The position numbers were made by a program, and so were the translations under genes. A stretch of 63,956 nt of DNA, the filler included, from Octopus bimaculoides (taxonomy: Eukaryota): the NCBI RefSeq assembly GCF_001194135.2. It is 7 parts of 6 records of this genome, joined end to end, with 100 filler letters (N's around TTAATTAATTAA, not from the genome) between each part and the next. Parts side by side here need not be neighbours in the genome. Positions count along the whole stretch, not along the records: positions 31,988 to 43,144 come from NC_068989.1; 6 more parts are not named here. One strand, written 5' to 3'. Below are positions 36,927 to 42,910 of this stretch, one piece after another (the first letter of the stretch is position 1; each line of letters starts with the position of its first letter). A model generated the notes under the pieces. That model had not been told where the DNA came from. It was given only the letters and a program-made list of their open reading frames with translations, and searched no databases.

Positions 36927-37014
36927 CTTTTTTCCCGCAAATAAGTGATGGCTTTGTTTGCTGATATTCTGTATGTAAACACAAGATAACAGCAGATAAG
37001 CAGCCCAGTTCTGC
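36927..37014 (-). CDS. PTPDC1: PTPDC1-like exon D (88 nt): (G)RTGLLICCYLVFTYRISANKAITYLREK(AG)
   Basis: cctaatatttAG acceptor and GTgagc donor; 2+28 codons+2 nt. Completes HCHAGLGRT and continues GRTG.LI.CYLV...R.....AI...R.K as in PTPDC1. Confidence 0.93.
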
Positions 37015-37487
37015 CTAAATATTAGGTGAAAGAAGACACATATTTAATATGTTGCATGAAATACAATTCTGAAATGAGTGAATGAATGTACAAATGCGTG
37101 TGTGTGTGTGTGTGTGCATATATGTATAAATATATATATGTATGTATGTACGTATATATATTGTTGTATTTCGGGATGGTCATTTTTTTTTTTTTTTGCC
37201 AAATAAACACATGCACTCTATATGTGAGAATGGACTAAGTGGAGCAAGAGCACACCCGAGGATGGAAAGTATTACTGGAGAGGTCACAGATGTGTAATGA
37301 AAGATTCCCAGACAACGGACATGAGTTAGAATAAGAACAATAATAAATGAGTAAAGAACAAATATATAGTGCGTGTGTTATTTATTTGGCAATATAAAAA
37401 AAATGACCATCCTAAAATACAATATCTGTTTCAACACACGGTTTCACATCAGGAACCTTGCAACACAAATTCATAAATATATATATC

Positions 37488-38709
37488 TCATCATTTAACA
37501 TTCTTCATCCACGCCATGCATGCATGGGTAGGATGGTTGACAGGAGCCAGACAGGCAGAAAAACTACCCCAGGCTACTGTGTCCGTTTTACAGGGATTTT
37601 ACAGCTGGATGCCCTTCCTAACACCAACCACTCTGCAGAGTGGACTCAGTACTTTTTAAGTGGCACTAGCACAGATGAGGTTAGTTTTGGCATGACTGTT
37701 ACAGCTGGATGCCCTTCCAAACGCCAACCGCGTTAGTGTAGACTGGATGCTTTTAATGTGGCACCAGCACTGGCAGGGTAACCAAGTAACTCACAAGACA
37801 AGAAATTATGAGAGGGGCAGGACTTTTGAGGAGGGGAACTTGTGTTAGTGGATGAAAGGTTAGAGTGTAACAAAGAGACAGAGAGACAGAAGCAGGTGTC
37901 TTGCCACAACAGAGGGGGCAGTAGATGAGGTAATCTAGTATCAAATGATGAAAGGTTAGAGGGTAACAGAGAAATAGAAAGGCAGAAATAGGTGTCTCGC
38001 TATAGAGGAGGTACATGGTTACCCATAGAGAGAGAGGTACAAGAAAAAGGCCAGAAACAAGTGTGCTGATGTAAAAGAGATACTTGGTTACCTAGTCAGA
38101 GGAAAAACAAGAGAAGGGAGAGTTGCTAATAACAACTTTAGTCTTAGTGAAGTTAACTTTAAGGCCCTTTAATTCCAAGTTTTGCTTCCAAATCTGGAAG
38201 TTCTTCTCCAATTCTGCTTCAGATTCTGTAAAAAGAGCAAGATCATCAGCATATAGTAGTTCCCATGGGCATCCAGATTTGAATTTATCTGTTATGGCCT
38301 GGAGCACTATGATGAATAAGAGTGGACTAAGTACTGATTCCTGGTGTACTCCAACTTATACGTTAAATTCAAGGCCAACTCTCATCTTACTGACAGCACC
38401 GCTGTATTTGGCTTGAACTGCTCTAACAAACCACTCCTCTATTCCTAGCTTCCTTAGAGACCAACAAATAAGAGAGTGGGGAACCCTGTTAAAAGCTTTC
38501 TCCAGGTCAGCGAAGGCTAAGTACAATGGCTTACTTTTAGCCAAATACTTTCCTTGTAACTGTCTCACTATGAAGATGGCATCTGTGGTACTTCTCCCAG
38601 GAACAAAACCAAACTGCATCTCATCTAGTTTAATTCTATTCCTAATCAATTGAGCTATAACTTTCTCTGTAATTTTCATGACTAGGTCCAGCAGTTTAGT
38701 ACTTCTATA
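37488..38709 (-). mobile_element. RTE-clade LINE relic: RT domain (38100-38709) joined to the 3' UTR and tail (37488-38100)
   Basis: KLLDLVMKITEKVI..QFGFVPGRSTTDAIFIVRQLQ.K..AFADLEKAFNRVP..GVHQES.LSPLLFII..WELLYADDLAL; tail homologous to 41641-41850 and 32539. Confidence 0.92.
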
Positions 38710-39398
38710 GGTATCCTGTGTCTCCCACCATCGATACTGTGTAAAGAGAGGGATTGCTCAGAATATAAAACATGAATATAAGCAGTGATCGTGATACACA
38801 CCACGAAGAAATGATCAAACTCATTAACAATCTACTAAGCAACAACTAACCCCAAAACATACTATCCACTCCAATTATGAAGAAAAGAGAGGATGAAACC
38901 AATAAACTGTCCACAGTCTGTCTACTCTATGGAAAGGCCACTTCGAAAAGATACAAAAGATATGCGGCCCATATGACATCAGGACAGTGTTCAAGAGTAA
39001 AACAACACTTAGCAAATATCTCCTTCGAGTAAAATCACCAATAGAAAAGAATATGATCAAAGACTGTGTGTACTCAATCCCATGCAGCTGTGTTATGTTA
39101 TACAAAGGCAAAACATGCCGCCCTTCAAAATAAGGGTAGAAGAACATCGCAAATCTGTGACATGAGAAGATATTGATAAATCGGGTATAGCTGATCATGT
39201 ATGGGAAAATGGAGACCACCTCCGCCTGTGGGATGAAGTTAAAATAATAGACAGAGAACACCACTGGAAAATACAAAAAAACTAAAAGAAGCAACACATA
39301 TGCTAGGACATAATAACCTCCTAAGCAGACCAAGTGCAGATATGAGTAGCATATGGGAACCAGTATTAAGGAAGGATAGGAAAATATTATATTTATAA
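38710..39398 (+). mobile_element. Penelope-like element 3' fragment: RT thumb/linker plus C-terminal GIY-YIG endonuclease, frameshifted
   Basis: SHHRYCVKRGI..HEEMIKL..NLLSNN.P..IRTVFKS.TTL..DCVYSIPCSC..Y.GKTCR..RVEEHRK..SGIADHVWENGDH...WDEVKIIDRE.HWK..KLKEA.HML..LLSRPS..IWEPVL. Confidence 0.92.
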
Positions 39399-39420
39399 GC
39401 CCTAAAATTCACTCCATAAT

Positions 39421-39650
39421 TGCCCATGGACATATGGCATAGTGGTTAAGAGCGCGGGCTACTAACCCTAAGATTCCGAGTTCGATCCCAGGCAGTGACC
39501 TGAATAATAATAATATCGAAAAATACCTTAGGAATGAGAACCCAGGTTCGAAATTTCCCCAAGATGAAGGCTGGAGGGTATATCAGCTGAAATATTGTGT
39601 TAACAACAAACAAGATGAGGACAAATATCCGTCAGAATTCCTCATCTCTT
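39421..39650 (+). mobile_element. Terminal module after the Penelope ORF: tRNA-like A/B boxes, (AAT)n, decayed hammerhead motif and a short inverted tail
   Basis: A box TGGCATAGTGG 39435-39445; B box GTTCGATCC 39480-39488; GATGA-A-GGCTG-loop-CAGCT-GAAA 39563-39592; AGATGAGGA/TCCTCATCT inverted pair 39613-39621 / 39639-39647. Confidence 0.65.
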
Positions 39651-39689
39651 AAATATAGAACTGTATTATATAAGAGATGTTGTTCATTT

Positions 39690-39856
39690 CTATTTTTCCA
39701 TGACAAAGATGTCTGGTCATGGGGAAATATTACATTACTTGGAAACAAGTGAGGGTTTGTGATAGGAGGGGCATCCAGCTGTAGAAAGACTGCTTTAACA
39801 AATTCTGTCTGACCCATGCAAGCCTAGAAAAGTGGATGTTAAATGATGATGATGAC
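39690..39856 (+). mobile_element. RTE-type 3' tail fragment
   Basis: ggaggggcatccagctgtagaaa...gacccatgcaagcctagaaaagtggatgttaaatgatgatgat. Confidence 0.75.
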
Positions 39857-40051
39857 AGTGGCTTTGCTGTTTCTAATCAATTCCATGTGTTTACTTATTT
39901 ATCTATGTAGCTAGATAGATGAGGGCCATTGATAGAGTTAAACAGTCTTTGACAGAAACAGTGTAGAAGGAGATTGAGGCATTTAATCTCCACCAGAAGA
40001 ATTAAAATAAATAACAATATAAAAAAATAACAACAAACATAGAAGACTTAC

Positions 40052-41299: not shown

Positions 41300-41495
41300 C
41301 CCTTGATCTGGATAACCAAGTTCTGTCAATATTGAGCCACTGAAAACGGCAGCTGAGGAAAATTGAAAACAAACTGCACCAGAAGTAGCAAAAAGTTCAA
41401 TTAAAGTCACAGTTCCATCATAAAACACCTTCATGAAATAGCAGAAGTGCTTAAACTTGGCCAGTGGATTCCACATCATCTGATTGTTTCTCAGC
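41300..41495 (+). mobile_element. Mariner transposase relic, N-terminal part (KHLHEIAEVLKLGQWIPHHL)
   Basis: A WVPHEL-equivalent motif preceded by an HTH-like segment; continues at 41880. Confidence 0.7.
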
Positions 41496-41600
41496 TTAAC
41501 CCTTTAGCATTCAAATCAGCCATATCTGCCCTAAATATTCTATCTGTTTTATTATTCCTGTGTAAAATTATAAAAATAATGACAAAAAGTGAGGAAAAGT
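41496..41600 (+). mobile_element. Possible piggyBac-like MITE end inserted in the mariner
   Basis: TTAA|CCCTTTAGCATT start; second end not found. Confidence 0.4.
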
Positions 41601-41640
41601 GGGTTCTCTATAATCATATTCAATGGAAACTAATGGTTGG

Positions 41641-41850
41641 CATCATCATCATCATCATCATCATCAACATTTATCGTCTGTTTTCCATGCTGGCATGGGT
41701 AGGACAGCTTGACAGGAACTGGCCAGACCAGGGGGTGCACCAGATTCCATAGTCTGTTTTGGCTTGGTTTCTACGGCTGGATGCCCTTCATAATGCCAAC
41801 CACTTCACAGAGTGTACTGAGTGCTTTTTATGTGACAGCAGCACCCGCAC
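41641..41850 (-). mobile_element. RTE-type 3' tail with a (CAT)n run
   Basis: catcatcat...ttccatgctggcatgggt...ggctggatgcccttcataatgccaaccac; homologous to 37490-37660. Confidence 0.8.
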
Positions 41851-41879
41851 TAATACTTTTTACATGGCACTTTGGTTTT

Positions 41880-42445
41880 AAGATTTTCCATAGAAAACAG
41901 AGGATTCATCTCCAAATCAAGACTACACCCCACAAAAAAAGATATGGCATATGAAGGGTGTTGTCTACCATTAAGATTTAAACCAAAATGAAACACTTAA
42001 TGTGAAGAAGTACTGTCATCAATTGGAAGCGTTGCATAAAAATTTGCAGAAAAAACATCCATCGCTGGCCAGTCATAAAAGAGTGTTGCTCTAACATGAT
42101 AATGCAAAACCACATATTGCCCAAGTCATTTGGGAAAAGATTATGGCACTAAATATGGAAGTTTTGCATCATGGTCTTTACTTTTCTATCTTGCTCCATT
42201 TGATTATAATCGTTTCAGATCAGTGCCACATTATTTAGAAGGAAAACAGTTTATTAATTGTGAAAAGATTAAAAATGATATTTTGAATGTCTCTTTGCTT
42301 GAAAACCAGAAAAACTTTACACCTGATGGATCAATAATTTTCCAGACAGATGAGCTTATATTACCAATAATGAGGGGAAATCTTGATTAAAAATATCAAT
42401 TATAACAAAGTATCATTTGATTGTTTCTCATGTGACCGAACTTTC
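41880..42445 (+). mobile_element. Mariner transposase relic, catalytic C-terminal part
   Basis: LHP..KGVVY..L.QNET.N..KYC.QL..L...L..KHP.L..RVLL.HDNAKPH..LAPFDYN.FRS..HYL.GK.F. Confidence 0.85.
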
Positions 42446-42794
42446 TTTNNNNNNNNNNNNNNNNNNNNNNNNNNNNNNNNNNNNNNNNNNNNNNNNNNNN
42501 NNNNNNNNNNNNNNNNNNNNNNNNNNNNNNNNNNNNNNNNNNNNNNNNNNNNNNNNNNNNNNNNNNNNNNNNNNNNNNNNNNNNNNNNNNNNNNNNNNNN
42601 NNNNNNNNNNNNNNNNNNNNNNNNNNNNNNNNNNNNNNNNNNNNNNNNNNNNNNNNNNNNNNNNNNNNNNNNNNNNNNNNNNNNNNNNNNNNNNNNNNNN
42701 NNNNNNATATATATATTTATAAAATTATTGCCTGAATGAACAAATGAGATTTCAAAAATGCAAAAATAATTTTATAAGAAAATAACTTCCATAC

Positions 42795-42910
42795 TGTTTG
42801 ATGACATAAAATCTTGGGGGTCATATGAAAATCCACTTGGTTCTAGACCTGGTCCACAACTAGCATGCTCTCCAGTCTCTTGAAGATTTATTACAGACAT
42901 TATTTTATAC
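42795..42910 (-). CDS. PTPDC1: PTPDC1-like protein tyrosine/dual-specificity phosphatase, internal coding exon A (116 nt): YKIMSVINLQETGEHASCGPGLEPSGFSYDPQDFMSSN
   Basis: Minus strand acceptor ccttatttcAG and donor GTatgg; 1+38 codons+1 nt, open. INLQ..GEHASCG..LE.SGF.Y.P..FM matches PTPDC1 as I recall the family. Splices in frame to the 22-nt exon. Confidence 0.93.

What the first reader, a model, noticed from the sequence alone, without database searches (positions are those of the whole stretch)
36927..42910. Hidden host gene: four PTPDC1-like phosphatase exons, including a 22-nt micro-exon, largely invisible in the ORF track
Seen: four GT-AG exons (116, 22, 107 and 88 nt; introns 2226, 388 and 3037 bp) splice in one frame to YKIMSVINLQETGEHASCGPGLEPSGFSYDPQDFMSSN-I-YFYNFA-C-QDYGTLSKSRLLDMVRVMQFALTQGKVAIHCHAGL-G-RTGLLICCYLVFTYRISANKAITYLREK. 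Known: HCX5R with an upstream general-acid Asp defines Cys-based phosphatases, and this sequence matches PTPDC1. Inference: 22 is not a multiple of 3, so skipping the micro-exon would frameshift the transcript before the catalytic loop, making it a potential on/off splicing switch. Gene predictors can easily miss it.
Basis: partly seen in the sequence, partly recalled or inferred. Interest (0 to 1): 0.7.

Follow-up and report, generated by a model that had tools for sequence, protein, structure and literature searches.

The report
Cephalopod PTPDC1 phosphatase exons, ancient micro-exon
The four short exons are real and encode the catalytic core of an ordinary animal phosphatase gene (PTPDC1); the 22-base micro-exon is an ancient part of that gene, already included in the three annotated protein models I could check, and nothing shows it acts as a splicing switch.

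Summary
On the minus strand, exons 42910-42795 (116 nt), 40568-40547 (22), 40158-40052 (107) and 37014-36927 (88) all have AG/GT borders. They splice into one 110-aa frame carrying HCHAGLGRTG and an upstream Asp.

The N gap (42449-42706) lies wholly inside intron 1. No residue is missing across the junction, so only the intron length (2226) is uncertain.

The product is a PTPDC1 orthologue: 75% identical to the annotated Sepia pharaonis PTPDC1 and 60% to the Ostrea edulis protein, with a CDC14-like fold.

The exon lengths 116/22/107/88 are identical in Sepia, in a second decapodiform-like contig and in the oyster. Hydra also has 116/22. The micro-exon therefore predates the cnidarian-bilaterian split. 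It is fused to the next exon in a crinoid, in a vertebrate-like ORF and in others.

The annotated Sepia, oyster and Hydra proteins already contain it, so those pipelines did not miss it. It encodes a core beta-strand just before the general-acid loop.

Skipping it does frameshift, with a stop 16 codons after the junction. That holds for any exon whose length is not a multiple of three, and no evidence of regulation exists.

One small curiosity: the junction codon gives Cys in all three cephalopods, where most relatives have Trp.

Verdict: ordinary and already known.

The parts
42795..42910 (-). PTPDC1 exon (116 nt), encoding (x)YKIMSVINLQETGEHASCGPGLEPSGFSYDPQDFMSSN plus the first base of Ile39. 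Acceptor ...ttatttcag|G, donor A|gtatgg.
   Evidence: tblastn E=1.4e-19. The exon is also 116 nt in L002, Sepia, Ostrea and Hydra.
40569..42794 (-). Intron 1 (nominal 2226 nt). It contains the assembly gap 42449-42706, a mariner transposase remnant and a 139-nt inverted-repeat element.
   Evidence: The gap is intronic and no residues are missing across the junction.
40547..40568 (-). 22-nt micro-exon TTTATTTCTACAATTTTGCCTG, encoding (I)YFYNFA plus the first two bases of codon 46. Acceptor ttctgttttatttcag|, donor CTG|gtaagt.
   Evidence: The orthologous 22-nt exon, with the same phases, is present in L002, Sepia, Ostrea and Hydra.
40159..40546 (-). Intron 2 (388 nt), largely a 21-nt tandem repeat (40369-40536).
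40052..40158 (-). Exon (107 nt), encoding (C)QDYGTLSKSRLLDMVRVMQFALTQGKVAIHCHAGL(G). It holds the general-acid Asp48 (40152-40154) and the catalytic Cys77 (40065-40067).
   Evidence: tblastn E=3e-18. Asp48 aligns with the CDC14B general-acid Asp.
37015..40051 (-). Intron 3 (3037 nt), with reverse-transcriptase fragments and SINE-like repeats.
36927..37014 (-). Exon (88 nt), encoding (G)RTGLLICCYLVFTYRISANKAITYLREK plus two bases of the next Arg codon. P-loop Arg83 is at 37010-37012. Donor AG|gtgagc.
   Evidence: tblastn E=1.4e-10. The exon is also 88 nt in L002, Sepia and Ostrea.
31988..36926 (-). Start of intron 4. The next exon (RPxSIQTR...) is not within the piece.
   Evidence: A regex scan and tblastn with full-length PTPDC1 proteins found nothing here.

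Best explanation
[quoted passage not shown] The source is a cephalopod, probably an octopod, and the gene is transcribed from the minus strand.

The exons encode the centre of the catalytic domain:
- a strand-loop region, INLQ..GEHASCG..SGFSYDP;
- a core beta-strand, YFYN, carried by the 22-nt micro-exon;
- the general-acid loop with Asp48;
- a helix;
- the strand plus P-loop, HCHAGLGRTG, with nucleophile Cys77 and phosphate-binding Arg83;
- the following helix.

The micro-exon is an ancient part of the gene that is, by inference, constitutively spliced. Both flanking introns were already in place in the cnidarian-bilaterian ancestor. The downstream intron was later lost in several lineages, which fused the 22 nt to the next exon. 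Inclusion is obligatory for a functional protein, because skipping shifts the frame and removes a core strand.

Shown here: sequence, splice signals, homology, conserved exon structure, purifying selection, and the structural position in a modelled orthologue. Inferred: constitutive inclusion, enzymatic activity, and a cellular role. In mouse cells, Ptpdc1 depletion lengthened cilia.
For: Exons and frame.

Family: Pfam DSPc 5.6e-12, above its cut-off. All named homologues are PTPDC1. The product is 83/110 identical to Sepia pharaonis PTPDC1, 87/110 to L002 and 66/110 to Ostrea.

Exon structure: 116/22/107/88 in window, L002, Sepia and Ostrea, and these exons reproduce the annotated proteins. 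Hydra has 116/22/79/90. In Antedon the 22 nt are fused to the next exon, giving 22+79 nt by my count from the printed sequence. The TG|GTAAG donor and the YAG acceptor are invariant in all five species.

Selection: pN 0.125 against pS 0.74 between window and L002, so dN/dS is about 0.04.

Active site: Asp48 is invariant. In the CDC14B alignment it sits 27 chain positions before the catalytic Cys, the spacing I recall for CDC14B Asp287 and Cys314.

Structure: the AlphaFold model of the Sepia orthologue (pLDDT 85, pTM 0.84) places the micro-exon residues 146-153 on strand E147-150, directly before the acid loop. The fold matches Cdc14 and DUSP23.

Function: mouse Ptpdc1 knockdown elongates cilia, and that paper describes the protein as a CDC14 homologue (PMC3069013).
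Against: No transcript data for the source species were available, so actual splicing and constitutive inclusion are inferred.

Only four exons lie in the piece. The upstream and downstream exons were not found, so integrity of the whole gene is not shown.

No database protein closer than the Sepia orthologue was retrieved. Whether this very locus is annotated is therefore unknown.

The residue two positions before the general acid is Cys instead of the usual Trp. In principle that could affect activity.
Confidence: 0.87

Rival explanations
1. One reading: the 22-nt micro-exon is a regulated on/off switch. Tissue-specific skipping would frameshift the mRNA, producing a truncated, catalytically dead product or NMD, and so tune PTPDC1 levels.
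For: Skipping does frameshift and gives a stop 16 codons after the exon 1/exon 3 junction, upstream of the P-loop. From general knowledge, 22-nt exons are hard for the spliceosome to define and are often regulated. A 139-nt inverted repeat and a 21-nt minisatellite flank the exon closely and could in principle modulate its recognition.
Against: The frameshift property is shared by every exon whose length is not a multiple of three. The exon has been kept at exactly 22 nt with a near-consensus donor and a strong polypyrimidine tract in Cnidaria and Mollusca. It encodes a core beta-strand. The named isoforms listed for Ostrea, Antedon and Lingula differ by only 8-20 residues. For Ostrea and Antedon the two isoforms read the same at the micro-exon position and their sequences differ at the N-terminus. 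No paper links PTPDC1 with microexons. The flanking repeats are not conserved in relatives.
Confidence: 0.08
2. The exons belong to a decaying pseudogene, or to a mis-assembled chimera joined across the N gap.
For: There is an assembly gap in intron 1. The introns are full of transposon debris. The neighbouring exons are absent from the piece.
Against: All four exons are intact, with canonical splice sites and all catalytic residues. dN/dS is about 0.04. Order, strand, phases and lengths match four other species on both sides of the gap.
Confidence: 0.03
3. The true exon is the 52-nt version that uses the upstream AG at 40599-40600, which would insert 10 residues in frame (STLHFCFISV...).
For: It is the only other frame-preserving AG...GT candidate that contains the motif.
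Against: No homologue has an insertion there. The orthologous exon is 22 nt in four other species. The proximal AG has the better pyrimidine tract.
Confidence: 0.02

Closest known systems
PTPDC1 of Sepia (Acanthosepion) pharaonis, CAE1285895.1 (P0100; locus L004)
   Same: 83/110 identical over the four exons. Exon lengths are the same (116/22/107/88) and so are the phases. It has the same TG|GTAAGT micro-exon donor and the same Cys at the junction codon.
   Different: Its introns are much longer or shorter (about 17 kb, 2.4 kb, 1.3 kb, 0.5 kb). There, exon 5 follows exon 4 after about 0.5 kb. In the window it is more than 4.9 kb away.
PTPDC1-like of Ostrea edulis (XP_056001514.1) and PTPDC1 of Hydra vulgaris (XP_065667305.1)
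   Same: Both have the same 116-nt exon followed by a 22-nt micro-exon with the same phases and donor. In the oyster the 107- and 88-nt exons match as well.
   Different: The junction codon is TG|G = Trp, not Cys. In Hydra the next intron lies 28 nt earlier (GK|V) than in molluscs (GL|G).
Vertebrate PTPDC1 (function from mouse, PMC3069013)
   Same: Same family and catalytic motifs. In ORFs P0071/P0072, which I judge vertebrate-like from memory, the exon begins at the same intron 1 position, before YFYNF.
   Different: In those ORFs YFYNFGWKDYG...HAGLGRTG is one uninterrupted stretch. There is no intron 2, hence no micro-exon, and the next intron lies after RTG rather than after GL.
CDC14 phosphatases (PDB 1OHC, 6G84, 5XW4)
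   Same: Closest solved structures by sequence (E about 1e-8 to 3e-9) and by fold. The P-loop and general-acid Asp align.
   Different: Only about 20-25% identical over the fold-search alignments. CDC14 has a duplicated A/B-domain arrangement that PTPDC1 lacks (from knowledge). It is not an orthologue.

Membership tests
Cys-based protein tyrosine / dual-specificity phosphatase superfamily | P-loop signature H-C-X5-R-(S/T) | tested here: met
   HCHAGLGRT spans the exon 3/exon 4 junction: Cys77 at 40065-40067, Arg83 at 37010-37012. Pfam DSPc 46.1 bits against a cut-off of 33.5.
Cys-based protein tyrosine / dual-specificity phosphatase superfamily | General-acid Asp on the loop upstream of the P-loop | tested here: met
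   Asp48 is invariant in alignments A1 and A2. It aligns with the Asp of FADG in CDC14B, 27 chain positions before the catalytic Cys. That is the spacing of Asp287 and Cys314, residue numbers recalled from knowledge.
PTPDC1 orthologue group | Closest named relatives are PTPDC1, with high identity | tested here: met
   Every named hit is PTPDC1 or PTPDC1-like. 75% identical to Sepia PTPDC1 and 60% to the oyster protein. CDC14 and DUSP23 are far weaker.
PTPDC1 orthologue group | Family-specific conserved block INLQ-x2-GEH-x2-CG...SGFSY-x-P...FM...YNF-x-W-x-D | tested here: met
   All invariant and near-invariant columns are present. The one exception is the position that is usually Trp, which is Cys here as in the other two cephalopods.
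PTPDC1 orthologue group | Shared intron positions with bona fide PTPDC1 genes | tested here: met
   Exon lengths and phases are identical to those of Sepia and Ostrea PTPDC1.
PTPDC1 orthologue group | Full-length architecture: N-terminal Cys-rich CxxFCGGxxCKY module and a C-terminal helical domain | not testable with these tools
   Those exons lie outside the 11-kb piece.
PTPDC1 orthologue group | Phosphatase activity and a ciliary/centrosomal role | not testable with these tools
   Known only from the mouse knockdown literature (PMC3069013).
Micro-exon (roughly 30 nt or less) | Very short internal exon with functional splice sites that is included in mature mRNA | tested here: inconclusive
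   The exon is 22 nt with canonical AG/GT and is needed for the frame. The orthologous exon is included in the annotated proteins of three species. No transcript data for the source species.
Regulated (alternative, e.g. neural) micro-exon | Tissue-dependent inclusion or skipping | not testable with these tools
   No RNA-seq was available. No conserved intronic element flanks the exon beyond the splice signals.

The most novel reading that the evidence does not exclude
All three cephalopods examined (window, L002, Sepia) have changed the first base of the exon after the micro-exon from G to T or C. The junction codon TG|G (Trp, two residues before the general-acid Asp) has thus become TG|Y (Cys). 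Cys occurs in none of the other 35 full-length family members examined. This cephalopod-specific Cys could alter acid-loop dynamics or make the enzyme redox-sensitive. Alternatively, the micro-exon could be skipped in a regulated way in cephalopod tissues. Neither possibility is excluded, and nothing beyond the substitution itself supports either.
Probability: 0.1. Interest if true: 0.35.

Novelty: already known. Interest (0 to 1): 0.12.

Why it matters
It matters little. This is an ordinary, conserved housekeeping-type signalling gene whose orthologues are already annotated with the same micro-exon.

The useful outcomes are practical. The exon model can be trusted despite the assembly gap. 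The micro-exon is a good test case for annotation pipelines, being 22 nt and conserved from Hydra to molluscs. The 'switch' idea should not be carried forward without RNA evidence.

The cephalopod Trp-to-Cys change next to the general acid is a minor lead for anyone studying PTPDC1 enzymology.

Tried and rejected
1. Next and previous exons. I searched the piece with a motif regex and with tblastn using full-length Sepia, oyster, crinoid and Hydra proteins. Nothing was found, so they lie outside the piece.

2. Source species. An exact look-up of the exon 1 ORF and a second word-based protein search with a junction-spanning peptide gave no closer relative. The source species, and whether this locus is annotated, remain unknown. 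'Octopod' is an inference from the 75-79% identity to decapodiform sequences and from the repeat content.

I used the exon 1 peptide instead.

4. Restoring Trp. I considered a non-canonical donor one base downstream (TGG|TAAGT...AGY). I rejected it because it would need a TA...GT or TA...GC intron in all three cephalopods, and the annotated Sepia protein has Cys. A-to-I editing cannot turn TGT or TGC into TGG.

5. A second YFYNF-coding 15-mer in intron 1 (41564-41578, minus strand) has no AG/GT flanks. I take it as an AT-rich coincidence.

6. ARAGORN found no tRNA-like element in the piece.

7. Oyster cluster members P0240 and P0241 turned out to be a genomic ORF of a large downstream exon, not transcripts, so they give no splicing evidence.

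8. A literature search for PTPDC1 together with microexon found no paper.
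Full report
**Observation.** I read the minus strand of 36800-43144 and rebuilt the proposed transcript.

| Exon | Coordinates | Length |
|---|---|---|
| 1 | 42910-42795 | 116 nt |
| 2 (micro-exon) | 40568-40547 | 22 nt |
| 3 | 40158-40052 | 107 nt |
| 4 | 37014-36927 | 88 nt |

Each follows a pyrimidine tract plus AG and precedes GT. The donors are gtatgg, gtaagt, gtaagt and gtgagc. The introns are 2226, 388 and 3037 nt.

The 333-nt product is open in one frame only.

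**The gap.** The only N run in the piece is 42449-42706. It begins 89 nt after the exon 1 donor and ends 1.9 kb before the micro-exon, so it is purely intronic. Continuity of frame is therefore set by exon phases, not by the gap. Exon 1 ends with one base (A) and the micro-exon supplies TT to make ATT. Homologues align across that junction without a missing or extra residue. Both exons have the same lengths in four other species. No coding sequence needs to hide in the gap. Only the stated intron 1 length is unreliable.

**Is it more than chance?**
- tblastn with unrelated database homologues finds each exon separately: E=1.4e-19, 1.5e-4, 3e-18 and 1.4e-10.
- Between exon 1 and exon 3 there are 76 AG...GT segments that would keep the frame open. 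Only the 22-nt one, and a 52-nt extension from an upstream AG, encode the family motif.
- That motif is expected 0.07 times in six frames of the piece.

**What the gene is.**
- Pfam gives DSPc at 5.6e-12, above its cut-off.
- The nearest solved structures are CDC14 phosphatases.
- All named homologues are 'protein tyrosine phosphatase domain-containing protein 1'.
- A HMMER scan of 1.8 billion representatives with the exon 1 peptide returned full-length proteins. A cluster look-up names them as PTPDC1 of the cuttlefish Sepia (Acanthosepion) pharaonis, and PTPDC1-like or unnamed proteins of Ostrea edulis, Antedon, Hydra vulgaris, Lingula, Montipora, Tigriopus, Ischnura and the ctenophore Bolinopsis.
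- Over the 110 residues the window is 83/110 identical to Sepia, 87/110 to an unnamed ENA contig (L002) that is itself 102/110 identical to Sepia, and 66/110 to the oyster.
- The source is therefore a cephalopod outside the cuttlefish/L002 group. An octopod is my inference.
- Between window and L002, synonymous sites are nearly saturated (pS 0.74) while pN is 0.125, so dN/dS is about 0.04. This is a gene under purifying selection, not a pseudogene.

**Active site.**
- HCHAGLGRTG carries Cys77 (40065-40067) and Arg83 (37010-37012). The motif is split by intron 3 inside Gly82.
- Asp48 (40152-40154) is invariant in both family alignments.
- In the CDC14B alignment Asp48 matches the Asp of FADG, 27 chain positions before the catalytic Cys. 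This is the spacing of CDC14B Asp287 and Cys314, residue numbers I recall from knowledge.
- An AlphaFold model of the Sepia orthologue (pLDDT 85, pTM 0.84) puts the micro-exon residues (146-153) on beta-strand E147-150. The acid loop, a helix, the strand leading into the P-loop and the next helix follow.
- The model's best structural matches are Cdc14, DUSP23 and archaeal PTPs.

**The micro-exon in other species.** I fetched the genomic loci and searched for exon combinations with AG/GT borders that reproduce the annotated proteins.

| Species / locus | Exon lengths (nt) | Note |
|---|---|---|
| Window | 116/22/107/88 | |
| L002 | 116/22/107/88 | |
| Sepia | 116/22/107/88 | reproduces the annotated protein |
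| Ostrea | 116/22/107/88 | reproduces the annotated protein |
| Hydra | 116/22/79/90 | reproduces the annotated protein |
| Antedon (crinoid) | 22 nt fused to the next exon | 116 and 22+79=101 by my count from the printed sequence |

- A Logan contig of unknown origin (L001) has intron 1 and intron 4 at the same phases, but no intron 2 or 3.
- ORFs that I judge vertebrate-like (P0071, P0072) read YFYNFGWKDYG...GLGRTG without interruption.
- A contig (L003) whose peptide, IYYYNFNIQ, matches the ctenophore-type protein P0138 has an intron 4 nt further downstream and no intron 1.
- In all five species with the micro-exon, the acceptor is YAG and the donor is TG|GTAAG.

The 22-nt exon is thus at least as old as the cnidarian-bilaterian ancestor and has been lost by intron loss several times. 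The annotated Sepia, oyster and Hydra proteins contain its residues, so existing pipelines did find it.

**The splicing-switch idea.** The arithmetic is right. Joining exon 1 directly to exon 3 gives ...SSNIKIMALCQKVGCWIWFE*, which is a stop 16 codons after the junction, before the P-loop. This is true of any exon whose length is not a multiple of three.

The evidence points towards constitutive use:
- the length has stayed at exactly 22 nt over very long evolutionary time;
- the splice signals are strong and conserved;
- the exon encodes a core strand;
- both listed isoforms of Ostrea and of Antedon contain the micro-exon residues, and their sequences differ at the N-terminus.

No paper in the library mentions PTPDC1 together with microexons. 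Without RNA data the idea is neither shown nor strictly excluded. I give it about 8%.

**A small curiosity.** Most relatives have Trp two residues before the general acid (NF-x-W-x-D). In the oyster and in Hydra this codon is split TG|G by intron 2. In the window, L002 and Sepia the first base of the next exon is T or C, giving Cys. Among the 36 full-length proteins aligned, only the cuttlefish has Cys. Most have Trp and a few have Met, Leu or Ile. Reading through the donor gives TGG in every species, which is why tblastn 'sees' a Trp there. A shifted non-canonical intron is not credible, and the deposited Sepia protein has Cys.

**Surroundings.**
- The next exon (RPxSIQTR...) and the previous one are not in the piece. 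Intron 4 is therefore more than 4.9 kb here, against about 0.5 kb in Sepia.
- The introns are full of repeats: reverse-transcriptase fragments at 38092-38679, a frameshifted mariner Transposase_1 remnant next to the gap, a probable DNA-transposon remnant at 35166-36102, SINE-like dispersed repeats, a 21-nt minisatellite filling much of intron 2, and a 139-nt inverted repeat just upstream of the micro-exon.
- None of the sequence flanking the micro-exon is conserved in relatives beyond the splice signals.

**Function.** In mouse cells, Ptpdc1 knockdown lengthens cilia and perturbs Gli3 handling. The same paper describes the protein as a CDC14 homologue reported at centrosomes (PMC3069013). Nothing here tests function in cephalopods.

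**Verdict.** The feature is an ordinary, already annotated kind of gene structure. The 'hidden gene' and 'splicing switch' framings are not supported by any evidence I could obtain.

Noticed in passing
window 40547-40548 + 40158 (minus strand); L002 16182-16183 + 16968; L004 38598-38599 + 41021: The codon split by intron 2 is TG|T or TG|C (Cys) in three cephalopods. It is TG|G (Trp) in oyster and Hydra. Most of the 36 full-length PTPDC1 proteins aligned have Trp at this position, and only Sepia has Cys. The residue lies two positions before the general-acid Asp.
   Followed up: partly
window 40369-40536: A 21-nt tandem repeat (about 8 copies, 70-75% alike) fills much of the 388-nt intron 2 and begins 10 nt after the micro-exon donor.
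   Followed up: no
window 40644-40782 and 40847-40985: A 139-nt inverted repeat (81% complementary, 64-nt spacer), looking like a MITE or hairpin, lies in intron 1 only 76 nt upstream of the micro-exon acceptor. It is absent from the aligned flanks of relatives.
   Followed up: no
window 38092-38679 (minus strand): Two ORF fragments match reverse transcriptase (RVT_1, 1.3e-9 and 9.7e-8). This is a retrotransposon remnant in intron 3, on the same strand as the gene.
   Followed up: partly
window ~41945-42390 (plus strand), abutting the N gap at 42449: A frameshifted mariner-type transposase remnant (Pfam Transposase_1, 6.7e-8) lies antisense in intron 1. The assembly gap sits between it and an (AT)n run.
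   Followed up: partly
window 35166-36102 (minus strand): Two adjoining ORFs (134 and 133 aa) look like a broken DNA-transposon transposase. Support is only a weak HTH_23 hit (about 5e-4, below the cut-off), so the element is unclassified.
   Followed up: partly
window 37584-37672, 37684-37729, 41756-41844: Dispersed 46-79-nt repeat copies sharing the core CAGCTGGATGCCCTTCC are present (78-80% alike). They are SINE-like and occur in both intron 1 and intron 3.
   Followed up: no
window 41564-41578 (minus strand): A second stretch encoding YFYNF (TATTTTTATAATTTT, identical to the core of the L002 micro-exon) lies in intron 1 without AG/GT flanks. It is probably an AT-rich coincidence.
   Followed up: partly
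window 40599-40600 (minus strand AG): An upstream AG would give a 52-nt in-frame version of the micro-exon, adding 10 residues. No homologue has such an insertion.
   Followed up: partly
L007 (Hydra) 16155-16233 / 17074-; L006 (Antedon) ~2800-2900 / 3273-; window 40052 / 37014: The intron that splits the catalytic region lies after GK|V in Hydra and the crinoid. In molluscs it lies 28 nt later, inside the P-loop (GL|G). In vertebrate-like ORFs it lies after RTG. This is an apparent case of intron sliding, or of independent gain and loss.
   Followed up: partly
window 36840-36880 and 37100-37170: (GA)n/(GT)n and (CA)n/(TA)n microsatellites lie close to exon 4: about 45 nt beyond its donor and about 85 nt before its acceptor.
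   Followed up: no
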